Shown: positions 3,180 through 38,055 of the stretch, one piece after another
Layout: each line of letters opens with the position of its first letter
Numbering within the stretch: the first letter of the stretch is position 1
Assembly: GCF_006345805.1 (NCBI RefSeq)
Contig: NC_043001.1
Location: forward strand, 61,318,001 to 61,382,000
DNA: 64,000 bases
Source of the DNA: Octopus sinensis
Taxonomy: Eukaryota
Reading direction: 5' to 3'
Made by a program: the position numbers and the translations under genes
The notes under the pieces: generated by a model
Database searches by the model: none
Told to the model about the DNA's origin: nothing
What the model saw: the letters and a program-made list of their open reading frames with translations, nothing else

Positions 3180-6125
3180 ACATGAGCCGTTCCAGTTAAT
3201 ACGATTTTGCACTTCCTATAAGGATGGTAAGCCTGATATTATTTTTAAATAGGTTTCAGTATCTTTTTTTTTATCATTCCTAGAGATCTTACAATCACTT
3301 GTACTGTAAGACTTGAGATGCCGCATTTTATCAATTTCCATTAGCAAGTCTTTATATTTACTAATCTTGTTAAATTCTTTCGCCGCTGTATTGTGATCGC
3401 AAGGATTACTCATGTAAATTAATAAACACACCTTTTTTGTCTGATCTATTATAATAATATTCGGTTTATTAGCTTTTATAGTTTTGTCGGTATGTACGGT
3501 GAAGTCCCATAGAATCGAAATATTTTCTCCCTCAGTCACAGCTTCAGGATGGTGTTTATATTATTTGTCAGCGGTTTTGATTTTAGAATGCCGACATATT
3601 GTCCAATATAAATACTGGCCGACTCTGTTGTCTTGCTTTATATTCTACAGGTGCTAAGACTCTACACCCTGAGATTAGGTGGACTATAGTTTCAATCTCA
3701 TCGTTACAGATTTGGCATTTGGGATCAGCTGTATTTTTTTATCACATTGGCTAGGTAGTTCCAGGTTAATAAGCTTTGGTCTTGAGCAGCTAATATAAAA
3801 CCTTCACTCTCTGCTTCTAGCTTTGAGCTTCGTAACCATTGGTGCGTGTGTTTCTGGTCGATATCAGCTTTTTTGCTACGGACCACATACTTGCCATGCA
3901 GAGGTTTTTGTTCCCATATGCTAGCTAATTTTTCATGTGCAATTAATTTTATTTTCTTTGCAGCAGCAGTTAGCGCATTTCCATCAACCTGATCAATCTG
4001 GTGGGTATCTAAGAGATCAGTAGCGACTTTTTTGCTCTCTTTAGTGAAGTTTTTTCAGTCTTTCATGTTTTTCAACAAGTTTTAACATCTAATCGTTGGT
4101 TGCTTCAAGGTAGTTGGCCAGTCCGATTGTGGTAGTTTTGTATGTAAGTTCAAGCTGGATCAAACCTCGAACTCCCTGAGCTCTTGGAAGGTAAAGGCGG
4201 TCCACGTCTGCCTTTGGATGATGCATCTTATCACAAGTCAGTAGCTTGCGGATTTTTCTGTCAATTTTCATTATTTCACTGGTATTCCAGTTAAGCACAT
4301 TAAAGCTATAAAGATCAACTGGGACTGTTAAGGAATTTATGGCTAACACCTTATTATATGCATTCAGCTCAGACTTCAGGATTGCTCGATCTCTTCAATA
4401 ACATTCCTTCCTAACATTCTCTTTCATGCTTGCATGCTGGATACCAGAGCTTTCATTTATTCCTAGGTATTTATAGGTCTGTTCCTGCTCAAGTTCCTTT
4501 ATTACTGTTTCGACATCTAATTCGATTGAACTTGACTTTACCAGTTTCCCTTTCTTAAACGTGGCTTTGGCACACTTTTCAAGGCCAAATTCCATCCCGA
4601 TATCATCACTGAATCCTTTCACAGTATGTAGTAGTCCTTCAAGCACTTCATCATCTTTGACATAAAGTTTTAAATCATCCATATAAAATAAATATCTTAT
4701 TTTCCTGTTGTCAATTTTGTTGCCATATCCTGTTCTATTCAGTTCACTTGAGAATGGTATTAGTGCTATGCAGAAAATTAGTGGTGAAAGTGAGTCACCT
4801 TGGAAAATGCCACAGTTTATGCTGATTTTGTTTGAGCGCAATACTCCATTAGAATGATATAATTGGAGCTTCATGTTCCATAGTGATACATTATACTATA
4901 AAAAATCTGAAATCACAGGAGACATTTTGAAAATGTCCGGCGATTTCAGAATCCACGAATGTAGTATGCTGTCAAAAGCTCTTTTATAATCAATCCATGA
5001 AGAGCTGAAATTTCTGCGCTTTTTATGGCAGTTTTCAAGGAGCATGCGATTAATTAGGAGCTGATCTTTGAATCCGTATGAGCCTAGTCTGCATCCTTTT
5101 TGTTCAGTGGGAAAGAGGTAATTCTCTTCCGTAAACGTATATGTTTTCTCTACTAGAATAGATATCAAAATCTTATAGGTAGTAGATAAGCATATTATAG
5201 GCCGACAGTTGTTTGGGTCTTTCGGTTCTTTATTTTTGGGGAGGAGGTAGCAATACGATTTGCCATCCAATGGGGAGCTTTTGCCGGGTCTTTTAAATAG
5301 TATTACTAAATATAGTATTATTAAATAGTATGCGGACGAGAGTGATAAGAGCCAGAAATTTGGTACTCTATCAATAACAGGGGATTTTCACTTATGTGCT
5401 TTCGCTAGTGCCCTCCTTAGGTCGGCGATTGAGATGTCTTCTCTTACCTGTTCTTGTTGATTTTTGTCGTCATCTTGGGTGCGTTTGATCCACTTTGCAT
5501 TTTCATTGTATGGTTTCTCATCACCCCAGATCCTTTTCCAAAAGTATTCAACTTCTTCCATTGGGGGTCGATTTTCAATGGCTATTTTTTCTTTCCCTAT
5601 TTCCCTGTAAAACGATTCGGCATTGGATTTGAACATCTTATTTTGTTTGTAGAATTTGATTCTTTTCTCAAATCTGAGCTTTTGCTTGAACTTTTTGTTT
5701 AAGTATTTCTTTTGCTGACATTAGTTCTCTTGTTGTGAGTCCATAATTTCTCACAACCTTCCTGCCTTTTCTTGATCTTACACCATTTCCAGAGATCAGC
5801 TCAGTTAATATTGATATCTCCTGTCGCAATGATTCAATTTCAGTTTCAATTCTACTCCTCCAGTTTGATGATTTCGTTTCGAATTTGGTATTGTTGGCTT
5901 TTGGGGAGTTAAACAGCGTCTTTCGATTACCTTAGCAACAGAGTAAATAATTTCATTTAACTTATTAAGATCATGATTTAGTTGTATGATTCTCGTGTAA
6001 ACGCAGTTGCCAATGTTTATTTGTGTGTTGTATTGGTGTGCATTTGAGAGTTGATGGAGTGGTTCCCTATCATTCATATTCGTAGGCCCTACAACTGCAA
6101 GCTCATTCAGAACTTCCTGCTTCAC
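3180..6125 (-). mobile_element. R4/Dong-clade LINE, near-complete ORF broken by frameshifts/stops (RT, CCHC, RLE)
   Basis: GIFQGDSLSPLIF and LFYMDDLKLY (4395-4874); NCRPIICLSTTYK (4896-5270); HPKADVDRLYLPR (4089-4349); EGFILAAQDQ and CQICNDEIETIVH near 3660-3840; ILWDFTVHTDKTIKANKPNIII (3216-3539). Confidence 0.92.
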
Positions 6126-19669: not shown

Positions 19670-19870
19670 TCCTATTAGAGGCACAAGGCCTAAAACTTTA
19701 GGGGGTGGGATAGTCGACTACGTCTACCCAAATGTTTCACTGGTACTTAATATATCGACCCCGAAAGAATGAATGTCAAAGTCGACCTCGGCGGAATTTT
19801 CAACTCAGAACGTGAGGATAAACGAAATAACGCTAAACATTTCACCCGGCGTGCTAATAATTCTGCGAAA
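19670..19870 (-). mobile_element. tRNA-derived SINE, family 1, between (TAA)n tracts
   Basis: tcgaccccgaaag...aaagtcgacctcggcggaattt...aactcagaacgt...cccggcgtgctaa. Confidence 0.8.
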
Positions 19871-19871
19871 T

Positions 19872-19872
19872 A

Positions 19873-19920
<48 letters not shown>

Positions 19921-20498
19921 TAATAATAATAATGATAATAATAAGAAGAAGGAGAAGAAAAAGAAAGAAAAAAAAAGAAAAAGAAAAAGAAGAAGAAGAA
20001 GAAAAAGAAAAAGAAAAAGAAAAAGAAAAAGAAAAAGAAAAAGGAAAAGAAAAAAAAAGAAAAAGAAAAAGAAGAAGAAGAAGAAGAAGAAGAAGAAGAA
20101 AAAGAAGAAGAAAAAGAAAAAGAAAAAGAAAAAGAAAAAGAAAAAGAAAAAGAAAAAGAAACAGAAACAGAAAAAGAAAAAGAAACAGAAAAAGAAAAAG
20201 AAAAAGAAAAAGAAAAGAAAAAGAAAAAGAAGAAGAAAGAAGAAGAAGAGAAGAAGAAGAAAAAGAAAAGAGAAAAAGAAGAAAAAGAAAAAAGAAGAAA
20301 AGAAGAAAAAGAAGAAGAAGAAAAAGAAGAAAAGAAGAAAAAGAAGAAAAAGAAGAAGAAGAGAAGAAAAAGAAGAAAAAAAAGAAAAAAGAAGAAGAAG
20401 AAGAAGAAGAAGAAGAAGAAGAGAAAAAAGAAAGAAAAAGAAGAAAAGAAGAAGAAGAAGAAGAAGAAGAAGAAGAAGAAGAAGAAGAAGAATAAGAA

Positions 20499-20529
<31 letters not shown>

Positions 20530-20560
20530 AAGAAGAAGAAGAAGAAGAAGAAGAAGAACA
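19872..20560. repeat. (TAA)n followed by ~640-bp (GAA/GAAAAA)n polypurine tract
   Basis: Read directly; explains the K/E/R and L/F/S ORFs. Confidence 0.97.
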
Positions 20561-20569
20561 GAAAAAGCT

Positions 20570-20970
20570 AAGCACATGAAAACCCGTGCTAAAACTGATG
20601 CCTTAGATATTCTGAATGATAAATGGCAAGAAAAAACTCACTATGACAAATACCCAAAGAGAGCGAATAGTGCATATGTTGACAAAGCCCTGACCCAACA
20701 ATGGCTAATGGCTTCTGGCTTAAAATCTGAAACAGAAGGGTTTATCATAGCAGCTCAAGATCGATGCCTACCAACAAGGAACTATCAGACCAACATATTA
20801 AAGAACGGCAGTAGCCCAACATGTCGTGTATGTCAACAACAAAATGAAACCATTGATCATGTTGTCTCCAAGTGCACCCTTCTAGCGCCTACAGAGTATC
20901 TCAACAGGCATGATAGAGCTGCACAATATATTCACTGGGTATTTTGCAAAAATCTGGATTTGCCCCATGA
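20570..20970 (+). mobile_element. R4/Dong fragment (post-RT region and CCHC knuckle), uninterrupted 132 codons
   Basis: QWLMASGLKSETEGFIIAAQDRCLPTRNY...CRVCQQQNETIDHVVSKC...YLNRHDRAAQYIHW. Confidence 0.9.
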
Positions 20971-24269: not shown

Positions 24270-26395
24270 TAGGGTTAAAAGAAAGGTGTATAAAAATTAA
24301 ATATTTTTTCAACGTAATTGAAAATCGCTAGTTTTGGTCAAATTTTGGATTTCATGGATTATAAGTCATAACGAATATATATTTTTACATAGCAGAATGC
24401 AAAACTGTAAATATGGTATCCTTAAGAGGTTGCATACCAAGTTTCTATACAATTGACTAATATCATAAGGTTACGCATTGAATATAAATAGAACGGGAGT
24501 GTGAACTTGTCTCCAGTGCCGCTGCAACGGTCGTTGTGTGTGAACGTACGTCGTACGTGTATGAAGTTTTCATCTTTGTACCTTGACTTTAAGACATTCT
24601 ATTAAAATTAATGATCGCGTTAAATTTAGTGTTCTTTACATTTAGTGATGACTCATAAGCTAATAATGCGTCATGACACTGAATACCCAATATTTGATAC
24701 TCCATGTGACCTTAACGAGCTAGTTTTGCCAACTTACAAGGACGTTCTCAAATTTATTTGGACAAGAAAACAAAAACAATGTAGTTAAAAAAGATCCTTT
24801 AATCAAACAAATCGTCAAGGTTGCAACAGAAAAGGTAATTCATTGGCAAAAGGCATCTCTCCCTTTTACCATGATTGAGTCAGTTAAACCGGAAATCTTA
24901 GACTTTTATCTAAAGTACCAAACATTACTAAAATCTGTGAAAAATGAAAAAAAATGTGTCATCGTTTCAAACCAAGTTTAATGCGTTTAAAAACAATGCA
25001 ACAAAAGATTTAATTGACATTTCCTACTGCAAGTGCAACTCCTTGACAAACTGCAGTTGTAATGGAGAACCACAGAGAGAACAAAATTTCTTTACAGAAT
25101 CAACGGACAAATTGAAAATTGTTCATTCGCGGAACAGATCAAGCAGTATCAAAACAGAACGTTCAGAGGTTGATTAGAAAGAATCGGCCAGGTCACATTC
25201 ACCCTTCTACATCAGGAAGAGATTCTGAATTGATAGCCCTTTCCTCAAGCAGTGAATTTGGATCAGCAGATGAAGATTTTCCAATTCCATTTTCCCTGTA
25301 ACGAAAAGACGTCAGCAAAAACGTAAGTCCAAATACTCCAATAAAACGAATGAAATTCCCAGAACTAGCTTCTGCCTGTGACCGCACCGGTGTGTCAGAC
25401 CGTGCTGCTGCTCTTACAAGTTCGGTCATCAGCGACTTAACAGCAAGTAGATCTGGTGAATGCTGTTTCGTTATAGACAGAACAATAGTAAGGCGGAAAC
25501 GATCCAGTGACAACAGTCGAGACGGTTTCATTAGGAGTCGAATTGAACCAAGAGAAAAATTTTGATACGCTGTACTCAGATACTAGAGAATCACATGCAC
25601 ATATATAAGAGAAAAATTTCATGTGTGCTAGACAAAAAAGGACTTCAAATTGAAAGATAATACAGCAATAATCAATTAGAATCGTTTAGTTTTAGCTATT
25701 TTGAACAAAACAAACAATTAGAAATATGTGGTTTTAGGAATTTACAAAACAACAAATCTTTGAATGTTCCAGTAATGGAGATTCAGATGCTAATTCTACG
25801 AAAAACATTAATTGACTTTACTACTGGAACGGAAAGGAATGCACTGCGGCGATTCGTATTATTTAGTGACAGGGATTTATTTCGAATAAAATGAGATGGA
25901 AATGTTAATTATTTTTATCACCGAAACGTGTCAAGAATCAAAAATTGGTTTACACGTAATTTTATTCTAATGTGTGTGTAATCTAGACCTCATGTCACAC
26001 ATATATTCGTTGACCTTATATATTAAAAATAATAAAGAAAACAAAGTCGGAAAGTCTATTTATTTCACATAATTTCGAAATATTAAGTGCATTGCGGAGC
26101 TTGAAGGTATAAATTCTAGAGCTTGTGATTTTAACAGTTTTGTTTCTTACAAATTTTGCAAAGGTTAATTAATTCGTAACAATGAATGTGAAAACAAAAT
26201 GAGTAACGGCAAACATGCTACAAATTGATTTTTCGCGTATTATTCAAAATTTTAAGTGGGCTGCCGAGCTTAAGGCTGTAAATTTACGAACTTCAGATTT
26301 CAACACAGTTGTTTTAAAGGATTTCACAATAAAAAATATATTCTCAAAAACATATTTCGAAAATCTATGTAAAAAATACCTTTTCGTTCCGCCCT
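24270..26395 (+). mobile_element. Decayed DNA transposon, hAT-like (possibly hATm); frameshifted transposase about 24670-25700
   Basis: LPTYKDVLK, WQKASLP, IDISYCKC...CSC, FLQNQR..LFI, LASACDRTGVSDRAAA..SSVISD...VIDRTIVRR; weak terminal similarity tagggttaaaagaaagg (~24268) vs cttttcgttccgcccta (~26380). Family assignment from memory. Confidence 0.55.
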
Positions 26396-27400: not shown

Positions 27401-28451
27401 CCAACGCTATTGACTGTTCACTAATATATCAAGCTGTTCCTGAAAAAAGGAGACATATTATCTTCAAATTTATCCCAAACAATTTACGAAGGAATTCTTG
27501 AAGTCACATCTAAATAATTACGTTTCATTGCACTTACCCAGGTAAGCAAACGTGCCAGAAAAATTACATGACTGCAGATACGCAAAAATGTTTATCCATA
27601 TATGCCATAGGGCTGTGTCTCTTTGAATACATTTTTAATGGGATTTTAAAATGATTGGAATGTTATTTTAAGGAAAAGGCTTATTTCAATAATGTTTTTC
27701 CCAGATAGTTTTATTACCTGTTGATTGATGTTATTTCAAATATTTCATCTTCATCAGATGTCTTATATCAAAGAACCAGAGTATTCGTTGGCGTCCGGTA
27801 ATGTTCATCCTAATCAACGTTTCGAAGACGTGGTAAGTTTAAGAGAGACTTTATATTATATATATTGCCTCACTTCATTCCCTCCTTATTAAAATCATCT
27901 CATTCACAGGTCATTTTGCTCGTTAACGTATAGCCTTATGGTTTGATATGTATAAGAAGCTATGATTTTGTATTAACATCCTAAAATTCACTATCTACAG
28001 AAACTCGGAGCAGTGTTGCTAATAAATATGCATAGGTATATATTAATACATACACTGCGCTAATACACACATATACACACATACAAACACACACACACAC
28101 GCACAAACACACACACACACACGCACACGCACACACACATATATATATATATATACTTATATGTACGTTACTTTGTTTCGTACGAAGAACGAAGAAGTAT
28201 TCAATACAAGGTGTAGAATATGTGGCTGTATATTAAGCCTGAAGATGGGAGTTTGTTGTGCTTCTATTTCTACAAACCTGTAATAGTTTATTTCGCCAGA
28301 AGAGTCGCATATATATGTATAAGCATGGCTATATACACTTATAGTTTACCTGCATATATATGTGTGTGTGTGTGTGTGTGTAAGCATGTATGTATGTAAG
28401 TATGTATGTATGTAAGTATGTATGTATGTATATATATATATATTATATATA

Positions 28452-28504
<53 letters not shown>

Positions 28505-28510
28505 TATATA

Positions 28511-28553
<43 letters not shown>

Positions 28554-28554
28554 A

Positions 28555-28770
28555 ACATACATTGAGAAATCTACAGTTACTCAATCCAGATTACAAGCTC
28601 AGGTTTATACCTGTAATTATTGGGGCCCTGTGATACGGAAAACACTGCCTAAATACCAATCTCGAGAAATTATGCTTCTTAAAACCAGAAAGGAGAAATC
28701 TAATTCGAAGACTACAGAGTCTAACCATCACTGGAACTGTAAAATTCTGATAAAAATTCCAGTTTACAAT
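28555..28770 (+). mobile_element. R4/Dong 3' fragment following (TA)n
   Basis: [23 protein letters not shown]...LIRRLQSLTITGTVK. Confidence 0.7.
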
Positions 28771-29999
28771 TTAAATTTATGAGCATGTTTAGATATGCAA
28801 ATATATGCATGAGATTACATACATGAAACACACACAAATCTCCACATGCCTATATACATGCATGCATGCATACGTACATAGATACATACATGCATACAAA
28901 CAAACAAGAATACCCTGTTGTTGATGTTGAAATTCCAATGGAGCCTTGGATCTAGGTTAGAAACCGGTTCTTTCTCTATTAGCAAAAAAATGTTGAAATA
29001 AACTGAAAATGACATACATACATACATACATACTTATATATATGTGCATGTGATTCTCTAGTATCTGAGTACAGCGTATCAAAATTAGGAGTCCGTGACT
29101 AAATAAGCAGAAACCCCTGCTGATTTTCATTCTGGGTAATGTTGCGATAAACCAGCAGGGTGAATGCAACATCTATTACAATTACAGAAATAACCCCCTA
29201 GATTTTGTAGGACACAAAAAATATCAATATGATAAATGAACATCATCTTTGCTAGTGATGCACTCCTAATGAATTTCTACAGTTCCTGCAGGTGAATTTA
29301 AAGGACACAATACGTTTAAGCAGGTAATTTTGTATGTTTCAGCTCGTGTGTAACATATTTCTATAGTATATGGGTACTATAAAACAAGTTTAATCGACAT
29401 GTGATGTGAACATTGAAGTATTTATTACATGAAAAGTTTCAGCTAAGTCACCTTCACATTTGATGTGCTTCAGAAATAAAGGAATAAGTTTAGATTTCAC
29501 ATCGCTTCTTTTCCGGTATAATTCTGATTTGCTTCTGACAGGTGAAACGATAATGTACTAAAGAGAAAGTGCGATAGATCCAACACAATCCAACTCCCTG
29601 TACAACAATTTATTTGTACAGGTTGCTCAGTAACAACATCCTGTGAAGTAAGAACAATCCATTGTGATTTACATGCATATAAAGAGATGCAATAAATCAG
29701 AAAATAAACTTATTTATTTATGGTTTGTCCACATATCAGAAGACAATTACTTAGTCATTCTTCCCCCTTAAAGAAAGACTTCAAAATATAGCGCGTTAAA
29801 TCAAAGACAAATCCGAGTATATGTTTGAAAACTTTCTACACCATGGGTATGTTGGCAGCGTGCTTAAGTTGTGTGTGTATATATATGTATTGATACATAT
29901 ATAAATACAAGTATATAAATCAGATAAAGGAGATGAAAAAATCTGCGTTGCGTCTTCATTAAGCTCCCTTACTCATGCTGGCTAAGAGAATGTATATGT

Positions 30000-30240
30000 A
30001 TAGAGGATATATCTTCTTTTCTACTCTATGCAAAAGGCCCGATTTGTTTTGCTTTTTTGGAGGGAGCGTGTCGATAAGATCGACCCCAGTACACAACTGG
30101 TACTTAATTTATCGACCCCGAAAGGATGAAAGGCAAAGTTGCCCTCGGCAAAATTTGAACTCAAGAACGTAAAAAACAGACGAAATACGGCTACGCATTT
30201 CGCCCGGTGTACTAGGGTTTCTGCCAGCTTACCGCCTTTA
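30000..30240 (-). mobile_element. tRNA-derived SINE, family 1
   Basis: gatcgaccccagt...ctggtacttaatttatcgaccccgaaaggatgaaaggcaaag...aatttgaactc...gcatttcgcccgg...ttctgccagcttaccgcc. Confidence 0.85.
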
Positions 30241-30857
30241 AATAATTTATCTTGAAGTAGGAAACTGTCCATATCAACTGAAATGCAGGGTCAAATAAAC
30301 CGTTCGCAGGATAAAAATATATTAATTCAAACATTGGAAATTTATGATACGACATTTAAACTTTTGATTATACTCATTTCATTACTCAATATATTCAATA
30401 TATATTTTATGAATATACATATTGATATCAGTGTGAATATATAAATGAAATAATAATATAAACATAATAAAATATTGTTATGGTTTACTTTAACAAAATA
30501 TATCATATTATAAATTCATTTATATTCATAATGAACACTCTATTCCAACTTCCATTATGTTCCTCTTCATGCCTTCTGATACTGACCCCAAGGACCTAAC
30601 AATAATTGGCACTATCTTCACCTTCATTTTTCATACCCGGTCTATTTCGTACTTAAGAGGGTTATATTTATCTATTGTTTTACCTTCCTTCTTGACTATT
30701 CCTGAGCGAAAGGGGCATGCTACATCAACTGTACAGCACATGTGGTGCACTTTTTCCGGTCTGTTATACTCTTGCACCTGAACTCTTTGGCTAGCGAAGA
30801 CCCACAGGATTTTGTTAATCTCCGATGCCGCCACTCTCTGCGGTTTGTGCTCATGCC

Positions 30858-30879
30858 ATTATTATTATTATTATTATTA

Positions 30880-30925
<46 letters not shown>

Positions 30926-30965
30926 CACTATTATTATTATCACTATTATTATTGTTATTATTATT
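30858..30965. repeat. (ATT)n microsatellite
   Basis: Read directly from sequence. Confidence 0.95.
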
Positions 30966-31249
30966 CAGGATGGTCGTTTTTTGCCAAAGAAACACGCATC
31001 ATATATTCGTTCTTCACACGTTTATTACTGCTATTTTAGCTTATATCCAATGCCTCAAAATCTTTTGTCTCACATCTGTGACACTTTCTATCCACGTGTA
31101 TCCTCCTGCCCCGCCTAGTCCATTTTTTAGGAGGAGCAGAATACTCGTGGACGGAAAGGATCACTGAAGAAGATTTACAGACGATGGACATAAGATAAAA
31201 TAAGAACAATAATAAACGAGCGAAGAAAGAATATATAATTTGTGCGTTT

Positions 31250-31300
<51 letters not shown>

Positions 31301-31597
31301 GTACATACATGCATAAATGGACACACGTGTGTTTGTGTTTGTGTGTGTGTGTGTGTGTGGTGTGTGTGTGTGTGTGTGTTTGTGTGTGTGTGCGTATATA
31401 TGTGTGTGTTGAATTCACTGAAGAGAAAAAGAATTACTGATATTTCAAATCTTTCATTAAATCTTTTTCACTTATCTTCGAAAACATTTATACAGACATT
31501 AATTTAATTTCGAAATATAATATGTATTAAACTTAGAAACTTATAGAATCCCTAGTAGTTTAGCCCGGCGTTAGGATTATTAAGCTAATATACATAT

Positions 31598-31644
<47 letters not shown>

Positions 31645-31647
<3 letters not shown>

Positions 31648-31842
31648 GGTCCCGGGTTGATTCGGGGTTAACCACAGTAAATAAGGTACTCAATACATAG
31701 CAGAGTAAAATTAATTTATTATATAGAAGGAGCTTCTACAGGACTAGAACTGTTTCATTCAAGAGAAATATTCAGGAAGCTTCCTGAAGATTTCTCTTGA
31801 ATGAAACAGTTCTAGTCCTGTAGAAGCTCCTTCTATATAATA
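31645..31842. mobile_element. (TA)n-flanked PLE-type terminal repeat with ~120-bp palindrome (31719-31840)
   Basis: Arms mirror around ggaagcttcc with one mismatch; the body recurs inverted at 49860-49980. Confidence 0.75.
31778..31828 (+). ncRNA. Type I hammerhead ribozyme motif
   Basis: AGCUUC-CUGAAGA(31784-90)-weak stem II UUC/GAA-GAAA(31803-06)-CAG/CUG-UA-GAAGCU; GUA site, cut after 31822. Confidence 0.65.
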
Positions 31843-32012
31843 TATATATATATATATATATATTATGTGAAATAGAAAGATGAATAATCTTGTTGTAGAT
31901 TAATCAAAAGTTAACCGATACCTTAGTAGCAAAAATCACAGCAGTAAACAGCACGGTTGGAGGTACAACCATCTGGCGTTGCAACCGTGCGTTGGTGCGG
32001 ATAATTGAAGTT

Positions 32013-32375
32013 AAAACATTATTGGTGAATTGAAGAAATGGAGCTGAACGCAGATTGAACAGAAATCGTTTTATTTCATTCTACACGTGTTTCGAAAGGC
32101 ACAAATTACCAAAATCCGATTGAATAATGGGACCATATTGTGTCTTTCTCTTCAGGAAGAAAAAAGGAAATCCGTTAGAGAAACAAAAACAGAACAGAGG
32201 CGGAGCAAAAACCAAATCGAACTATGCTCCTTTTTTCTTCCTGAAGAGAAAGACACAATATGGTCCCATTATTCAATCGGATTTTGGTAATTTGTGCCTT
32301 TCGAAACACGTGTAGAATGAAATAAAACGATTTCTGTTCAATCTGCGTTCAGCTCCATTTCTTCAATTCACCAAT

Positions 32376-32383
<8 letters not shown>
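32013..32383. repeat. Inverted repeat, ~155-bp arms (32013-32168, 32228-32383), ~59-bp spacer
   Basis: Arms are reverse complements; (TA)n downstream. Confidence 0.92.
32235..32322 (+). ncRNA. Type I hammerhead ribozyme motif with long stem II (mirror copy 32074-32161, minus)
   Basis: UUCUUC-CUGAAGA(32241-47)-GAAAGACACAA/UUGUGCCUUUC-GAAA(32303-06)-palindromic ACACGUGU-A-GAAUGAA; cut after 32314. Confidence 0.75.
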
Positions 32384-32429
<46 letters not shown>

Positions 32430-32437
<8 letters not shown>

Positions 32438-32905
32438 TGAGAATGTGTGTCTGTCTGTCTGTGTGTTTCCCTAAAACTTGAGAACTACCCAACCAATTTC
32501 CTTCAAATTTTACACATGCCTTACTTAGGGTCCATGTAGTTTCATGGGCGGGCAAATGAATTACAGTATTACGTGTTAAAAATGAAACAAAAACATTTCC
32601 CTATTTTATGTCAGATACTTTCACTTTAACAATAAAATTTAGAGATAATAATAACAATTGAATTATATGTAGTAAGTAATAATTAAAATCAAACTAAAGT
32701 ATAATATAATCGTAACATAAGAAAAGTAAAAATAGCAATTGGTATAAAATTGCATCAATGACTTGAACTTGAATAAGTGGTTTCACATGAATGAGAATAA
32801 ATTAAAAATAAAATTAGTGTGCAGAAATGGAATAGTCCAGATGGAGCTGTGCACATACCATTTACTACGGCTTTTACATTAGATTATCTGCTAATTAGCT
32901 AGCAT
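32430..32905 (+). mobile_element. Possible non-autonomous Helitron-like element
   Basis: tataaaactgagaatgtgtgtctgtctgtctg...accaatttccttcaaattttacac resembles Lep1-type Helitron 5' ends (from memory); 3' end uncertain. Confidence 0.35.
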
Positions 32906-33256
32906 TAACTATCTATATGAAGTTTGGCTGTATGTAATGTCTGTTTTCTCGAACAGCCGCTTCTACTGCTGTTGGTTTATTTCTTATACATAAAGGACTA
33001 TAGCTTCAACTGCGTACTGCTTTTTGATTCACCGTAAGGTTTGTTGTTATTATTATTGCTGTTTAACTATTGTTATCACGTTTGTTGGTTCCTCGTAAGG
33101 GAAACGTTGTTGTGTTGCATTTGTTAAATAATTGTAAACTGTAGTCCTCCCCCTTTGGGTGAAGGAGCTTTGGTTATTGTTTAAAAATTGAATTGTTTCC
33201 CTGTTTGGGGAAATTGACAATATTTTCACCGTTTATACGGAAGCATTTTTGTTAGA

Positions 33257-33790
33257 ATGCCTTCCATAGAAGAAAGTCCAAAAATGAACTTTGCTGCCGC
33301 CGTCGGCAGGCGAGAACTCATTAAAATTAAAATGGAAGAAATACAAACCTATTTCCTATTGATCACCGACAAAGACGGTGAATCTAGGATAACACAGCCA
33401 AACGAAATAAAAAGTTAAATAAAAGAAAAGACTATTGTCTATAAAGTATACAATGTAGAGGAAAAAAAGATTTGAACACCTGCATGAAAGCACCAACGAA
33501 AAGTGTCTTGGTGCGACTATGAAAGATATCTAACCAGAGGCGGTAAATTCGCCACAATAGAAGTAAGGTTCGAGTCAACGGAGCGTGCAAGGGAGTACTC
33601 GACTTGAACCTTGCAAAGTGGAAATATTTTATTTTTACCTTTATATCTGGGACGTAGAACGTCCCGGATAAAAATTTAAAAAATTTTCCCCCAGAAGTAG
33701 AAGTAGGCTGGATTGTAGCCACACTTCTATACAAGAGGAAGAACACGATAAAATTGATCGAAATTACAAGAGACGGGCCTAGAATTCCAG
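33257..33790 (+). pseudogene. Second decayed LINE ORF1-like fragment related to 6130-6930
   Basis: MNFAAAVGR...; RYLTRGGKFATIEVRFESTERAREYST vs RYGTVDVRFATEEEARK. Confidence 0.5.
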
Positions 33791-33975
33791 TCTGTTATAT
33801 ATTTTGAGTATTGTTATCACTAGCTATATCAAGATATAACTTTGTATTTTATGTGTAGATGTATATATATATATAGATGTACATGTAATATGTACACATA
33901 TACATACACATATATAAACAAGCACTAGCACTATGACCCGGCACCGACGGGTCATCATGCTAGCATATATATATA

Positions 33976-34022
<47 letters not shown>

Positions 34023-34372
34023 AACACAGACTCATACACATATATATATATGTGTGTGTGTGTGTGTGTATATATATAGTTTTGGTCTTTTATTCTGCTT
34101 TTACTTGTTTCAATCATTTTGACTGCGGCCATGCTGGACCACCAACTTGCGTTTCCATACCACTCATGCTTTTTTAAGACCACAGTCCGTATTTTCAGGA
34201 TGATTACAGTGTATTCCATAGCGCCCGTGGGCATCGGGTAGATCATCTTCATGGATTCATTTCTTCAGGCGATATAACATTGTAACATTAATGAATGTTT
34301 TAAACTGGGGGCTGTTTATCCCTTTCGACCAGTAAATATACGTGAGAAATTTAACTGTGTTTATCTACCGTA

Positions 34373-34377
<5 letters not shown>

Positions 34378-34449
<72 letters not shown>

Positions 34450-34460
34450 TAGGTAGATAG

Positions 34461-34491
<31 letters not shown>

Positions 34492-34500
34492 GATAGATAT

Positions 34501-34580
<80 letters not shown>
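34378..34580. repeat. Compound (TA)n-(GA)n-(GATA)n microsatellite
   Basis: Read directly from sequence. Confidence 0.97.
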
Positions 34581-34599
34581 CATCGTAGCATCATAAACT

Positions 34600-35824
34600 T
34601 GAAATATTTATAAAACCATCAAAAGCTTGTTTATTTTTGTTTTTTTTATTTACTATTTGTGTTGCTTAATATGTTTTGCTAAAATTGCTGGTTATTTTCA
34701 GATATTATCAGAAAAGGGTAATTAAATTCGCTAAAATGACAGATCTATCGGACTTTGAAAGAGCTCAAATTGTTGGCGATCGTATGACAGACGCTAGCGT
34801 AACGAAAACAGCTGAAATGTTTGCTGTATGAAGAAGTACTGTCTTGAAAGTATTGACAGCCTTTGAGAAAGAGGGAAAAACCTCATCGTCGAAACAAAAC
34901 TCGGGAAGAAAACCAAAACTTTCAGACAAGAAACGTCGGGCTGGCACGCGAATTGTTGGAAAGGATCACAAAATTACAGCTCCGAAAATGACTTTAGAGC
35001 TTAATGACTACCTCGGGAACCCAGTTTCCACAAAAATGTTCGCTGGGAGAGGCACAAAGCTGAATTTCACGAGAGGGATGCAATCAGAAAACCATTAATT
35101 TCAGAAACAAACATTGCAAAGCATTTAGAGTGGAGTAAAAACCTACAGAATTGGTCCCTAGATCAGTGGAAGAATGTTATTTTCTCGGAGAAGTCACTCT
35201 TTACTTTGTTTCCGATCACCGGCTGAGGATACGTGTGAAGACAGCCAAAAGAAGCATTTGACCCAGACTGGCTTCTTCCAACAGTTAAACATGGGGTAGG
35301 ATCTGTGATGGTCTGTGTGGGGGGGGCTATCTTGGAAATCCGCCTGCGCAATGGTTGCACTTCACGGCAGAATTTATAGTCAAGATTATTTATGCATTTT
35401 ATCTGATCAAATTCATCCTATGGTTTCGGAAGTGTTTCCGGGGGAACGCGCAGTCTTTCAGTGTGGTAATGCACCATTTCTCACGGCTAAATTTGTTACT
35501 GAATGACACGAGGAACATTCTAGTGAAGTTGAACATCTTATCTGGCCACCACTGTTCACAGATCTCAATATTATTGAACATCTATGTTGCATTTTAGGAA
35601 AATAAGTAAGGATTTGATATCCTCCACCATCATCACTACAAGAACTGCAAACTGTTTTAGCTGGAGAATGGACAAAAAGTCCTTTTGGAAACAATTCAAA
35701 CTTTTTTATGAGTCCATACCTCGTAGAATTCAAGGTGTAATTACTGCCAAAGGCGGTTCTACCACATATTATAATAAATTCGTTTGAAAGTTTAAGGTGT
35801 TTCCATTATCTCGTCCAACCCCTG
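34600..35824 (+). mobile_element. Tc1-family transposon; pseudogenised transposase about 34737-35775, right TIR present, left TIR lost
   Basis: [82 protein letters not shown]; end aaggtgtttccattatctcgtccaacccctg-TA. Confidence 0.9.
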
Positions 35825-35867
<43 letters not shown>

Positions 35868-35928
35868 ATATATATACATACATACATACATACATACATG
35901 CATACATTCATACATACATACATACATA

Positions 35929-35980
<52 letters not shown>

Positions 35981-36039
35981 ATATAGCATTGTAAAATCAT
36001 GCATGCGTATTGTTTGTATATCTATTGTCATTTTTTCAG

Positions 36040-37980
36040 AGAGATATAGCCAGAAGAAATGTCTATTGTCCCCGAAATTGCCATCAGCAGGAAACCCTAT
36101 TAACAGGGGGCCATCGCCACTGCAATTACCACAGCTTTATGATAACCAGTGATTACAATTCCTGTCCAGACGATTATATACTAGAATGTGTTGAAGATGA
36201 TAAAGAATATATACTTAGATTGTATCTTCAGGAGGGATATCGCGGTAAATGCCATGGTTATCAGTGTCATCACCAGTCACAATTACAGAACAAGCAATTT
36301 GATTACAATACACTTCAGAATATAAATCGATGCAATCAGATTGGGAAGCAGCGATCCGTTCAGAATAGCGTTAGTTCCGCTTCTGAATATTACACTGATG
36401 AATTAGAAGACGATGTTTCCTATCCCGAAAAACAATGTCAGCGGGAAGACGAAAACCATGAAAAAGATATTCAGAAGCATATTAATGTTCAGAAACAAGA
36501 ATGTCTCGAAAATAAATCTCGCCATGAATATAATCATTATAATTGTCTGGATCATCGTTGTCGTTATTGTTGTTTTCAGCATCCATATGGTAGTGAGCAA
36601 TATGATGACTCAGAGACATTTTCTCAGACAAGTGATAATCTGCAGGAATGTGAAACAACATGCCCATTCCACCACCAACATGAACATCATCACCACCACT
36701 ATCATCATTATTATTGTGATCATAATCGTGACTACTATATGCAATATTATAAACGATATCCACACTGCTATCCAAGCTACTATGACGAAAATCAATTTGG
36801 AAATGAAAATAATAAATACTATGCATATGAGCGCCCTAAAAAGCCCGAAAAATATAGTGAAAATACATACCAAAATCAGAAGCGGGAGGAGACGCCAGTG
36901 CAACAAACACAAAAGTCTGTATTGAAGAATAAAGATAAAAGCCCAGTTAAGACACAAATATCTGAACAGAAACAGGGGATTGAAGAGCAGCAACGACGGG
37001 AAAATAAACCTGAGGGCAAATTAAAAGAAAAAGAGCAATATATACCACAAGCATCGAATATTCGGAAACAAAAGTCAGACGAACTTCGACAGGAGAAAAG
37101 CAATACGAAAAGCGACAAGAAAAATGGGCAGCAACAGAAACCCAAGAAACAAGAACTTCAGCAACAGTCCGAGAATGTCAGTCATAAAAAAAGGCAAGTA
37201 AATGAATCTCCACAACTAACTAAACACCTGAAGCAAAAACGTACGACAAACAATCATATACAAAATAATGTAACATCAAACAAAAAGAAGATGCAAGGTG
37301 GGCGATTACTCAAGCGTGAATATAAAGTGAAACAAATAGAGAAACAACTTCCCAAGCCGAAGACATCTACCAAGCAAACGAAAAAGCAAGAACGAGAACA
37401 GAACATAAAAAATGTTGTCCCTGAAATAAATGGGCAAAGTAAACGCGCTAAACAACAGCAGTTTCCGCAGAAAGCGCAGAAGGGTGCATCGTTTGTCAGT
37501 AAAGAATGCCCCGAGAATAAAGAGTGTTCAATCAATAGAATATGCCCCTTGGATAAAGAATGTTGTGTAAATAAAGAATGCACCATAGATAAAGAATGTT
37601 GTATAAATAAAGAATGCGCCATGGATAAAGAATGCTGTGTAAATAAGGAATGCTCCATGGATAAAGAATGCTGTGCAAATAAAGAATGCTCCATGGATAA
37701 AGAATGCTGTGTAAATAAAGAATGCCCCATGGGTAAAGAATGCTGTGTAAACAAAGAATGCCCCATGGGTAAAGAATGCTGTGTAAACAAAGAATGCCCC
37801 ATGGATAAAGAATGTTTTACAAATAAACAATGCTCCTTTAATAAAGATTGCTCCATCAATCAACAATGCGAGCACCGGTCTCCAGAGACTTGTCATGGTA
37901 AATGCCAGCACATGGTATATCGTCTGAAATATTGTAAAACTCATCTTCCTTATCAAAACTCAATACTGATTAAATTATAA
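36040..37980 (+). CDS. Large intact terminal exon or single-exon gene for an uncharacterised low-complexity protein (C/H/Y-rich N-region, K/Q/E-rich middle, Cys-hexapeptide C-terminal repeats)
   Basis: 656-codon stop-free frame (36010-37980) in otherwise decayed DNA; pyrimidine tract and CAG acceptor ending 36039 in phase 0; first in-frame ATG 36139; AATAAA at 37998 and 38050. True start unknown. Confidence 0.8.
   Translation, partial: RDIARRNVYCPRNCHQQETLLTGGHRHCNYHSFMITSDYNSCPDDYILECVEDDKEYILRLYLQEGYRGKCHGYQCHHQSQLQNKQFDYNTLQNINRCNQIGKQRSVQNSVSSASEYYTDELEDDVSYPEKQCQREDENHEKDIQKHINVQKQECLENKSRHEYNHYNCLDHRCRYCCFQHPYGSEQYDDSETFSQTSDNLQECETTCPFHHQHEHHHHHYHHYYCDHNRDYYMQYYKRYPHCYPSYYDENQFGNENNKYYAYERPKKPEKYSENTYQNQKREETPVQQTQKSVLKNKDKSPVKTQISEQKQGIEEQQRRENKPEGKLKEKEQYIPQASNIRKQKSDELRQEKSNTKSDKKNGQQQKPKKQELQQQSENVSHKKRQVNESPQLTKHLKQKRTTNNHIQNNVTSNKKKMQGGRLLKREYKVKQIEKQLPKPKTSTKQTKKQEREQNIKNVVPEINGQSKRAKQQQFPQKAQKGASFVSKECPENKECSINRICPLDKECCVNKECTIDKECCINKECAMDKECCVNKECSMDKECCANKECSMDKECCVNKECPMGKECCVNKECPMGKECCVNKECPMDKECFTNKQCSFNKDCSINQQCEHRSPETCHGKCQHMVYRLKYCKTHLPYQNSILIKL
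37507..37866 (+). repeat. Coding minisatellite: 20 x 18-bp units grouped as 36-bp (C-x-x-D/G-K-E-C-C-x-N-K-E)
   Basis: Read from sequence and translation. Confidence 0.95.
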
Positions 37981-37997
37981 CCAGTATTTTTCGAACT

Positions 37998-38055
37998 AAT
38001 AAAATAGCAAATATCATTACGTTACTGCACACAAGTTTCTAATACGCTCAATAAA
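37998..38055 (+). promoter_or_regulatory. Two candidate polyadenylation signals (AATAAA 37998-38003 and 38050-38055)
   Basis: Within 75 nt after the stop codon; AT-rich background weakens the signal. Confidence 0.5.

What the first reader, a model, noticed from the sequence alone, without database searches (positions are those of the whole stretch)
36010..37980. Intact 656-codon orphan ORF in a field of decayed transposons
Seen: the only long stop-free non-microsatellite frame in 64 kb, with a phase-0 acceptor at 36039 and AATAAA just after the stop. No transposon motif and no family I recognise; it lacks reflectin Met/Asp motifs and the Gly-rich modules of suckerins or beak His-rich proteins. 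Three-part layout: C/H/Y-rich head, charged K/Q/E linker, Cys-repeat tail. Inference: a lineage-specific structural or metal-binding protein, possibly gamete- or tissue-restricted. No signal peptide is visible in this exon.
Basis: partly seen in the sequence, partly recalled or inferred. Interest (0 to 1): 0.72.

Follow-up and report, generated by a model that had tools for sequence, protein, structure and literature searches.

The report
Octopus-only cysteine-repeat protein gene
The long open frame is the main exon of a real gene, already annotated but misnamed and unstudied, that is found so far only in Octopus; it encodes an 80 kDa, largely disordered, cysteine-, histidine- and lysine-rich protein whose job is still unknown.

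Summary
A 661-codon stop-free frame holds ORF 36010-37980 (+), against at most 199 codons in shuffled windows.

It is the terminal exon (36040-37980) of an Octopus sinensis RefSeq gene, XP_036358591.1, named [quoted passage not shown]. No Mediator domain supports that name. A 25-codon first coding exon lies at 27758-27832, across an 8.2 kb intron full of transposon debris.

The frame is intact in O. vulgaris and O. bimaculoides, with the same acceptor and stop and only in-frame indels. dN/dS is 0.49 (p=2e-4). Neutral drift would keep it open about once in 10,000 trials.

No relative outside Octopus was found in 1.84 billion representative proteins, Pfam or the PDB.

The protein has no signal peptide and no Trp. 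It has three parts: an acidic His/Tyr/Cys head, a basic K/Q linker, and 21 hexads [ND]-K-E-C-[CSP]-[VIM] with an invariant C-terminal cap. The hexads give only sub-threshold hits, all to left-handed beta-helix families, and AlphaFold2 models are unusable.

My best guess, at low confidence, is an intracellular cysteine-crosslinked or metal-stabilised scaffold, possibly germline. Expression could not be tested. Interest is modest.

The parts
25350..25487 (+). Possible upstream exon (5'UTR or alternative N-terminal extension). It is open in O. sinensis and is followed by GTAAGG.
   Evidence: It matches the 44-residue N-terminal extension of the O. vulgaris model CAI9722340.1 at 93%. In O. bimaculoides its 5' half, including the ATG, is replaced by unrelated sequence, so it is probably not conserved coding sequence.
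27758..27832 (+). Coding exon 1: ATG plus 25 codons (MSYIKEPEYSLASGNVHPNQRFEDV). An acceptor-like cag sits just before the ATG, and the donor GTAAGT starts at 27833.
   Evidence: Exact tblastn match to residues 1-25 of XP_036358591.1. Sequence read. Conserved at 23 of 25 residues in O. bimaculoides.
27833..36039 (+). Intron of 8,207 nt (GT...AG). It holds transposon debris and ends in a (TA)n/(TACA)n microsatellite plus a polypyrimidine tract.
   Evidence: Exon coordinates. Microsatellite at 35825-35985. Intron blocks align to O. bimaculoides at 84-89% identity.
36040..36864 (+). Head module (protein residues 26-300): acidic (net charge about -16) and rich in Tyr, His and Cys. It includes the His run HHQHEHHHHHYHH at 36670-36714.
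   Evidence: Composition and pI. No Pfam hit. PDB profile hits are only His-tags. Exhaustive phmmer found only the O. bimaculoides orthologue. Residues 26-145 are 90-100% identical between species.
36865..37497 (+). Linker module (residues 301-511): basic (pI 10.3), K/Q/E-rich and predicted disordered. It carries a bipartite-NLS-like motif, KKR-x12-KQKR, at 37186-37242.
   Evidence: for composition. AlphaFold2 gave no secondary structure and pLDDT about 30. It is the most divergent part, with dN/dS 0.54 and 30-residue blocks down to 54% identity. The NLS reading is motif inspection only.
37498..37875 (+). Tail repeat array (residues 512-637): 21 in-register hexads [ND]-K-E-C-[CSP]-[VIM]. It is built from a 36-nt (12-aa) DNA unit of about 9.8 copies at 37500-37852.
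   Evidence: Tandem Repeats Finder: period 36, 86% matches. Hexad table. Unit number differs between species: 21, 23 and 19 hexads. The only sub-threshold hits are to left-handed beta-helix families.
37876..37980 (+). C-terminal cap (residues 638-671, RSPETCHGKCQHMVYRLKYCKTHLPYQNSILIKL) plus the TAA stop.
   Evidence: 100% identical in the three species. The last 45 codons have the lowest dN/dS, 0.23. The tail-only model predicts a short helix here at low confidence.
37998..38055 (+). Candidate polyadenylation signals: AATAAA at 37998-38003 and 38050-38055.
   Evidence: This is weak evidence, because the hexamer is frequent in this AT-rich window.

Best explanation
Shown: 36040-37980 is the terminal exon of a real, selectively maintained, two-coding-exon gene of Octopus sinensis (RefSeq XP_036358591.1; exon 1 at 27758-27832). 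It encodes a 671-residue, 80 kDa protein with no signal peptide and no Trp, and no detectable relatives outside the genus Octopus. Inferred, with decreasing confidence: (1) The protein is cytoplasmic or nuclear and mostly intrinsically disordered. (2) Its C-terminal 21 hexads [ND]-K-E-C-[CSP]-[VIM] act as an assembly module. They either stack into a beta-solenoid of the left-handed beta-helix type, with Cys and V/I/M facing inward, N/D at the turn and K-E outside, closed by the invariant 34-residue Cys/His cap (about 0.3). Or they fold only when their 31 cysteines are bridged by metal or disulfides. (3) The acidic His/Tyr/Cys head binds divalent metal, and the basic K/Q linker is a flexible spacer that binds polyanions. 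(4) The whole protein therefore works as an intracellular scaffold that self-associates and is cross-linked through cysteines. It would be the fast-evolving, repeat-variable, Cys/Lys-rich kind of structural protein that in other animals builds sperm accessory structures (tissue guess testis/sperm, about 0.35). Tissue, partners and metal are unknown.
For: Gene reality:
- 100% match to an annotated RefSeq protein, with orthologues in O. vulgaris and O. bimaculoides.
- The exon is intact with the same acceptor and stop in all three species, and all indels are multiples of 3.
- dN 0.071 against dS 0.146, omega 0.49, Fisher p=2e-4.
- Only 1 in 10,000 simulations of 150 random substitutions kept the frame open.
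- Canonical GT...AG intron.

Intracellular location: no signal peptide or hydrophobic segment in either coding exon; GRAVY -1.44.

Disorder: AlphaFold2 pLDDT 29 for the full length and 38.7 for the tail alone.

Tail as hexapeptide solenoid:
- 21 in-register hexads with Cys in 21/22 and an aliphatic residue in 16/22.
- The only Pfam hits are left-handed beta-helix domains: LbH_EIF2B at E=2.6e-5 to 1.4e-3 in three species, LbH_GLGC at 0.057, and a faint precomputed GMPPB_C hit.
- The only PDB profile hit at E<=10 is LpxD (4e75), E=0.0018. It aligns in register: V/I/M on I/V/L, N/D/G on G/D, Cys on the small inward residue.
- The LbH hit disappears or weakens in 7 within-hexad permutations, the reversed sequence and a shuffle.
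- Between species, hexad position 5 (outward) changes most, and position 6 changes stay aliphatic.

Constrained modules: residues 26-145 and the C-terminal cap are 90-100% identical.

Fast evolution and variable repeat number fit reproductive or structural proteins; this link rests on general knowledge.
Against: - There is no expression, localisation, proteomic or metal-binding evidence of any kind, and no paper mentions the gene.
- All left-handed beta-helix hits are far below Pfam's curated cut-off (24.6 against 54 bits).
- One permuted control reached E=3e-4 against an unrelated family (zf-CXXC), so repeat-inflated E-values near 1e-4 are close to noise.
- hhalign of the tail profile against E. 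coli LpxA and LpxD gave probability 0.06%, no better than the FabZ negative control.
- AlphaFold2 did not build a solenoid.
- The array is a recent duplication of one 12-aa unit, so it holds only about two independent hexads. A random hexapeptide repeat has roughly a 1-in-7 chance of fitting the [LIV]-[GAED]-x-x-[STAV]-x pattern in some register (my estimate).
- Pro at hexad position 5 in 5 of 21 hexads is unusual for a beta-strand.
- The sperm or testis assignment is analogy only.
Confidence: 0.4

Rival explanations
1. Soluble metal-buffering or storage protein doing a metallothionein-like job. The 31 tail cysteines (CC-x4-C-x5 pattern) and the His run and His/Cys clusters of the head would chelate Zn, Cu or Cd. 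The protein would be disordered until metal is bound. Such a role would suit an animal that handles large copper and cadmium loads.
For: 19.5% Cys in the tail and 33 His overall, including HHQHEHHHHHYHH. Cys is 42/46 and His 27/32 conserved between species. No signal peptide. Low AlphaFold2 confidence is what apo-metallothioneins also give (the comparison rests on general knowledge).
Against: At 80 kDa it is about ten times larger than metallothioneins. An aliphatic residue at every sixth position, abundant Tyr and His, and a 210-residue basic linker are not metallothionein traits. No Pfam metallothionein hit was found. No metal data exist.
Confidence: 0.2
2. Nuclear, chromatin- or RNA-associated disordered regulator or condensate scaffold. 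The basic K/Q linker with NLS-like motifs would bind nucleic acid, the Tyr/His-rich head would drive phase separation, and the Cys/His motifs would be zinc knuckles. The database names ('Mediator subunit 26', 'NST1-like') hint at this class.
For: Linker pI 10.3, net charge +31, and the conserved motif KKR-x12-KQKR. The Y/H/N/Q-rich segment at residues 236-290 resembles low-complexity assembly domains (my reading). No signal peptide.
Against: No Med26/TFIIS, zinc-finger or any DNA- or RNA-binding Pfam domain was found. The database names rest on low-complexity similarity only. NLS-like motifs arise by chance in K-rich sequence. This model gives no role to the 21 Cys hexads.
Confidence: 0.15
3. 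Secreted structural biomaterial (egg-case, spermatophore, beak or cuticle-like matrix) cross-linked through Cys, His and Tyr, by analogy with other cephalopod His- or Tyr-rich materials.
For: The His/Tyr/Cys-rich composition and tandem repeats are typical of invertebrate load-bearing materials (general knowledge).
Against: No signal peptide is present in exon 1, exon 2 or the O. vulgaris N-terminal extension. Gly is only 2.8%. No similarity to any such protein was found in any search.
Confidence: 0.05
4. Not a functional gene: a chance or decaying open frame, or a domesticated or decayed transposon ORF that the annotation pipeline picked up.
For: Low-complexity, A-rich sequence surrounded by transposon debris. 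dN/dS of 0.49 is high. No homologues exist outside one genus.
Against: The frame is open across three species despite about 150 substitutions (simulated chance 1e-4). All five indels are in frame. dN is significantly below dS. The splice sites, ATG exon and stop are conserved. There is no transposon domain.
Confidence: 0.03

Closest known systems
Left-handed parallel beta-helix (hexapeptide-repeat) domains, e.g. LpxD/LpxA acyltransferases, the eIF2B-epsilon LbH domain and the GlgC/GMPPB C-terminal domains
   Same: Long uninterrupted run of 6-residue repeats. An aliphatic residue recurs every sixth position, followed by N/D/G, with a small residue (here Cys) two positions before the next aliphatic. 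These families are the only ones hit by Pfam and PDB searches, and LpxD aligns in register. A conserved non-repeat C-terminal segment follows the array, as in LpxA and LpxD (general knowledge).
   Different: Scores are well below family thresholds (24.6 against 54 bits), and hhalign against E. coli LpxA and LpxD is null. There is no catalytic or nucleotide-binding partner domain. Cys sits at every core position, and K-E is invariant on the surface. The array arose by recent expansion of a 36-nt unit, so any likeness is probably convergent rather than homologous. The fold was not confirmed.
Cys-rich insect antifreeze beta-helices (Tenebrio molitor 12-residue repeat type; spruce budworm left-handed type)
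   Same: A 12-residue sequence unit with cysteines exactly six residues apart, the spacing that gives one cross-helix disulfide per coil in the beetle protein (general knowledge; spacing shown).
   Different: No Thr-x-Thr ice-binding face and no signal peptide, which those disulfides require. No sequence hit to those PDB entries was found. This protein is ten times larger and has two additional modules.
Sperm accessory-structure proteins rich in Cys and Lys (mammalian ODF1, SMCP and cylicins; Drosophila Mst84D/Mst87F family)
   Same: Intracellular, no signal peptide, short Cys-containing tandem repeats, Lys-rich stretches, fast evolution, variable repeat number, lineage-restricted, and most of the coding sequence in one exon. 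This is a likeness in how it may work, not in ancestry.
   Different: No sequence similarity. The repeat motif is NKEC(C/S/P)(V/I/M), not C-G-P or CCxP. Testis expression was not testable here.
Mediator subunit 26 (the RefSeq name) and NST1 (the earlier O. bimaculoides name)
   Same: Only K/Q/E-rich low-complexity composition.
   Different: No Med26/TFIIS-like N-terminal domain and no other Mediator signature appeared in Pfam at E<=10. The name is an annotation artefact and should not be propagated.
Metallothioneins
   Same: Clustered CC and C-x(4-5)-C motifs flanked by Lys. Likely disordered without a ligand.
   Different: Size (80 kDa), aromatic and His content, aliphatic periodicity, and no Pfam hit.

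Membership tests
Mediator complex subunit 26 (name carried by RefSeq) | N-terminal TFIIS/Med26 helical-bundle domain and Med26 middle/C-terminal domains recognisable by Pfam | tested here: not met
   Pfam scans of the whole protein and of each module at E<=10 found no Med26 or TFIIS domain.
Left-handed beta-helix / hexapeptide-repeat superfamily | Tandem hexapeptides fitting [LIV]-[GAED]-x-x-[STAV]-x | tested here: met
   21 in-register hexads read as [VIM]-[NDG]-K-E-C-[CSP]: aliphatic residue in 16/22, N/D/G in 20/22, Cys in 21/22. Cys stands in for [STAV]. This is only about two independent hexads because of recent duplication.
Left-handed beta-helix / hexapeptide-repeat superfamily | Score above the curated threshold of a family model | tested here: not met
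   Best hit is LbH_EIF2B at 24.6 bits against a cut-off of 54; LbH_GLGC scores 13.8 against 27. hhalign against E. coli LpxA and LpxD gave probability 0.06%. A permuted control reached E=3e-4 on an unrelated family.
Left-handed beta-helix / hexapeptide-repeat superfamily | Triangular left-handed solenoid fold, 18 residues per coil | tested here: inconclusive
   AlphaFold2 gave pLDDT 29 for the full length with a 3-sequence alignment, and 38.7 for the tail alone. It shows short periodic strands but no confident fold. No fold search was run because the models are unusable.
Transposable-element proteins | Reverse transcriptase, integrase, transposase or endonuclease domain | tested here: not met
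   No such Pfam domain in the ORF. Neighbouring ORFs do hit RVT_1, so the method detects them in this window.
Metallothionein | Small size (under 10 kDa), about 30% Cys, no aromatic residues or His, and a Pfam metallothionein signature | tested here: not met
   671 aa, 7.3% Cys overall (19.5% in the tail), 40 Tyr and 33 His, and no Pfam hit.
Cephalopod structural families (reflectins, suckerins, His-rich beak proteins) | Reflectin Met/Asp motifs, or Gly-rich modules with a signal peptide | tested here: not met
   Gly 2.8% and Met 1.6%, with no signal peptide. No similarity to any protein outside the three orthologues.
Sperm Cys-rich structural proteins (functional class, not a homology family) | Testis- or spermatid-specific expression and presence in the sperm proteome | not testable with these tools
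   No expression data were reachable. The gonad transcriptome paper's held supplements do not list the gene.
Taxonomically restricted (orphan) gene | No detectable homologue outside a narrow clade despite sensitive search | tested here: met
   Exhaustive phmmer of the head against 1.84 billion representatives found only O. bimaculoides. Word-indexed searches of the whole protein, the tail and a 200-aa piece found only Octopus or nothing. Caveat: it is unknown how many other cephalopod proteomes those libraries hold.

The most novel reading that the evidence does not exclude
A genus-specific protein, possibly born de novo from A-rich sequence and a 36-bp repeat expansion, that has convergently arrived at a left-handed beta-helix with a continuous cysteine ladder in its core. 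This would be a redox- or metal-switchable rod, fused to a His/Tyr metal-binding head, used as a new building block of an Octopus-specific cellular structure such as a sperm accessory fibre.
Probability: 0.12. Interest if true: 0.6.

Novelty: new variant of a known kind. Interest (0 to 1): 0.33.

Why it matters
The gene model already exists in three Octopus annotations, so the ORF itself is not a discovery. Three results are worth keeping. First, the RefSeq name, Mediator subunit 26, has no support and will mislead enrichment analyses. Second, this is a clean example of a selectively maintained, fast-evolving, genus-restricted gene with a variable-number coding repeat, which is useful for studies of orphan-gene origin in cephalopods. 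Third, if the tail really is a Cys-laddered hexapeptide solenoid, it would be an unusual non-enzymatic animal use of that architecture, reached independently. None of this bears on a long-standing open question unless expression places the protein in a cephalopod-specific structure.

Tried and rejected
- Pfam on the whole protein and each module gave only sub-threshold LbH hits.
- PDB sequence searches with the single sequence and with the head profile returned only His-tag artefacts.
- Exhaustive phmmer of the head found only the orthologue.
- Word-indexed search of the tail region found only the Octopus orthologues. A 200-aa head piece, meant to catch short transcript-derived fragments, found nothing.
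- AlphaFold2 on the 3-sequence alignment and on the tail alone gave pLDDT 29 and 38.7. The models are unusable, so no fold search was run.
- hhalign of the tail profile against E. coli LpxA and LpxD, with FabZ as control, was null.
- tblastn of the protein against the rest of the window found no paralogue there. A self-comparison of the head against the whole protein found no significant internal repeats.
- I tested whether RefSeq isoforms X2 and X3 are splice variants. The 36- and 108-nt deletions have no GT-AG placement, so they are losses of one and three repeat units rather than introns. They are probably transcript or allele length variants.
- An Rfam scan of the window found nothing.
- Seven literature searches were run. 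The four on accessions and database names found no paper, and the three wider ones found nothing on this gene. Supplement look-ups in two octopus papers found no mention.
- The Tc1/mariner reading of the intron remnant upstream of exon 2 was not confirmed by Pfam, which gave only HTH_Tnp_Tc3_1 at E=0.085.
Full report
**1. Observation**

The stop-free frame is 661 codons. Every other ORF of 150 aa or more in the window is a purine microsatellite artefact (19747-20577), a transposon fragment, or an overlap of this ORF itself. Fifty shuffles of the window never gave an open frame longer than 199 codons. The acceptor ttttttcag|AGA at 36039/36040, the TAA at 37978-37980 and AATAAA at 37998 and 38050 are all present. 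AATAAA is common in this AT-rich DNA, with 182 copies in the window and 12 inside the ORF, so it carries little weight.

**2. Identity**

A word-indexed search of 5.8 billion proteins returned a 100% identical, 671-residue RefSeq protein from Octopus sinensis. It is XP_036358591.1, named [quoted passage not shown]. The same search returned an 82% identical O. bimaculoides protein, XP_014787980.1 (LOC106881961, "uncharacterized", earlier "NST1-like"). The cluster also holds O. vulgaris CAI9722340.1 and RefSeq isoforms X2 and X3. The window is therefore O. sinensis chromosomal DNA, and the gene is already annotated.

A GTAAGT donor follows them, giving an 8,207-nt intron. A further upstream piece at 25350-25487 is used as an N-terminal extension in the O. 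vulgaris model. It is truncated in O. bimaculoides, so it is probably 5'UTR.

**3. Is it a real gene?**

I fetched the orthologous loci: L001 for O. bimaculoides and L002 for O. vulgaris. The large exon is open in all three species, with an identical acceptor context and stop. The five indels are 3, 3, 6, 36 and 36 nt long.

- Nei-Gojobori estimates for O. sinensis against O. bimaculoides give dS 0.146, dN 0.071 and omega 0.49.
- By module, omega is 0.41 for the head, 0.54 for the linker, 0.56 for the tail and 0.23 for the last 45 codons.
- The dN deficit is significant, Fisher p=2e-4.
- Flanking and intronic DNA is 84-89% identical, so dS is about neutral.
- In 20,000 simulations of 150 random substitutions, the frame stayed open in 0.01%.

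This is a protein-coding gene under real but relaxed constraint.

Isoforms X2 and X3 differ from X1 by deletions of exactly one and three 12-residue units. Neither deletion can be placed on GT-AG boundaries. I read them as transcript or allele length variants of the repeat, not as splicing. This also hints that transcripts exist, but it is an inference about how the annotation pipeline works, not a result obtained here.

**4. Anatomy of the protein**

The protein is 671 aa and 79.9 kDa, with pI 8.4 and GRAVY -1.44. It has no Trp, no signal peptide and no hydrophobic segment.

- **Head (residues 1-300).** Acidic, with Tyr 11%, His 9% and Cys 6%. It includes HHQHEHHHHHYHH and several C-x3/4-C and CH motifs. 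Residues 26-145 are 90-100% conserved.
- **Linker (301-511).** K 20%, Q 17.5%, net charge +31. It carries a conserved bipartite-NLS-like motif, KKR-x12-KQKR. It is the most divergent part.
- **Tail (512-637).** 21 in-register hexads [ND]-K-E-C-[CSP]-[VIM]. They are encoded by a 36-nt unit repeated about 9.8 times at 86% identity. The hexad count is 21 in O. sinensis, 23 in O. vulgaris and 19 in O. bimaculoides.
- **Cap (638-671).** RSPETCHGKCQHMVYRLKYCKTHLPYQNSILIKL, invariant in the three species.

**5. Search for relatives**

Pfam found nothing significant in the head or the linker. PDB hits for the head are only His-tags. An exhaustive phmmer of the head against 1.84 billion representatives found only the O. 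bimaculoides orthologue. Word-indexed searches of the tail and of a 200-aa head piece added nothing. There is no paralogue in the window. Within the reach of these libraries, the family is confined to Octopus. I do not know how many other cephalopod proteomes those libraries hold.

**6. The tail**

The only sub-threshold signals all point to one architecture, the left-handed parallel beta-helix.

- Pfam LbH_EIF2B scores E=2.6e-5 to 1.4e-3 in the three species, LbH_GLGC scores 0.057, and there is a faint precomputed GMPPB_C hit.
- The sole PDB hit of a tail profile at E<=10 is LpxD (4e75), E=0.0018. It aligns in register: V/I/M on I/V/L, N/D/G on G/D, and Cys on the small inward residue.
- Read as [VIM]-[NDG]-K-E-C-x, the hexad fits the classical [LIV]-[GAED]-x2-[STAV]-x motif.
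- Seven within-hexad permutations, the reversed sequence and a shuffle lost or weakened the LbH hit.

Several results argue for caution.

- The scores are less than half the curated cut-off.
- One permuted control hit zf-CXXC at E=3e-4, so E-values near 1e-4 are close to repeat-inflated noise.
- hhalign against E. coli LpxA and LpxD was null, no better than the FabZ control.
- AlphaFold2 produced no confident fold: pLDDT 29 for the full length and 38.7 for the tail alone.
- The array holds only about two independent hexads, because it is a recent duplication of one unit.

I put a solenoid of this type at about 0.3. The alternative is a segment that orders only on metal-thiolate or disulfide bridging.

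**7. Mechanism**

Three things are shown: the gene is real, it is selectively maintained, and it is restricted to Octopus in the libraries searched. That its product is intracellular is inferred from sequence alone, because it has no signal peptide or hydrophobic segment.

My best inference is a modular scaffold. It would have a metal-binding acidic head and a flexible basic spacer. A Cys-hexad assembly and cross-linking module would follow, closed by a conserved cap.

The combination of traits is the signature of sperm accessory-structure proteins in other animals. Those traits are no signal peptide, Cys and Lys richness, fast evolution, variable repeat number, lineage restriction, and nearly all coding sequence in one exon. 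That makes testis the most likely single tissue, at about 0.35. This is analogy, not evidence.

The rivals are a soluble metal buffer (0.2), a nuclear disordered regulator (0.15), a secreted biomaterial (0.05) and a non-functional ORF (0.03).

**8. Known families**

The protein is not a Mediator subunit, because no Med26 or TFIIS domain is present. It is not a transposon protein, a metallothionein, a reflectin, a suckerin or a beak protein. It resembles hexapeptide beta-helices in repeat pattern only, and it fails their score thresholds. I therefore describe it as perhaps built like one, not as a member.

**9. Literature**

Seven literature searches were run. The four on accessions and database names found no paper, and the three wider ones found nothing on this gene. 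Supplement look-ups in an O. bimaculoides epigenetics paper (PMC9476566) and an O. sinensis gonad transcriptome paper (PMC11202624) found no mention either.

**10. Verdict**

The functional reading is untested but reasonable. The gene is already annotated, though misnamed, so novelty lies only in the description of the protein and the tentative solenoid reading. Interest is 0.33.

Noticed in passing
window 36040-37980 (database annotation): The RefSeq product name 'putative mediator of RNA polymerase II transcription subunit 26', and the older O. bimaculoides name 'stress response protein NST1-like', rest on K/Q/E low-complexity similarity. No Mediator or TFIIS domain is present.
   Followed up: yes
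window 37569-37689: RefSeq isoforms X2 and X3 equal X1 minus exactly 36 nt and 108 nt inside the repeat array, with no possible GT-AG boundaries. They look like coding repeat-number variants (alleles or transcript alignments) rather than alternative splicing.
   Followed up: partly
window 36040-37977 vs L002:20083-22056: O. sinensis and O. vulgaris differ in this exon by 5 nonsynonymous and 0 synonymous substitutions plus one extra 12-residue unit pair. The counts are too small to test (chance about 0.38), but the pattern is suggestive for a fast-evolving protein.
   Followed up: partly
window 35825-35985: A 160-bp (TA)n/(TACA)n microsatellite lies about 45 bp upstream of the exon-2 acceptor at 36039, separated by a short unique stretch and the T-run. 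Its length variation could affect splicing.
   Followed up: no
window 34676-35787 (+): Broken ORF pieces in the intron resemble a Tc1/mariner transposase; for example, one ends ...[25 protein letters not shown]. Pfam gives only a weak Tc3 HTH hint (E=0.085). The block aligns to O. bimaculoides at 84%, so the insertion predates the species split.
   Followed up: partly
window 297-863 and 4395-5270 (-): LINE-type reverse-transcriptase fragments (Pfam RVT_1, E=5e-5 to 2e-13). They confirm the decayed-retrotransposon background.
   Followed up: yes
window 19747-20577: An 800-bp purine-rich (GAA/AAG/GAG-type) microsatellite yields 240-276-aa pseudo-ORFs of poly-K/E/R on one strand and poly-L/F/S on the other.
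   Followed up: no
window 25350-25487 (+): A 46-codon open piece starting with ATG and ending at a GTAAGG donor. It is used as an N-terminal extension in the O. vulgaris gene model but is 5'-truncated in O. bimaculoides. It is probably a 5'UTR exon.
   Followed up: partly
window 37254-37956 (-): Antisense ORFs of 201 and 142 aa across the repeat array are by-products of the 36-nt periodicity. Nothing supports them as genes.
   Followed up: partly
window 36001-38000: The coding strand is strongly A-rich (AT skew +0.27, against about 0 in most neighbouring stretches), reflecting K/Q/E/N codons. This is compatible with, but does not demonstrate, origin from A-rich non-coding sequence.
   Followed up: no
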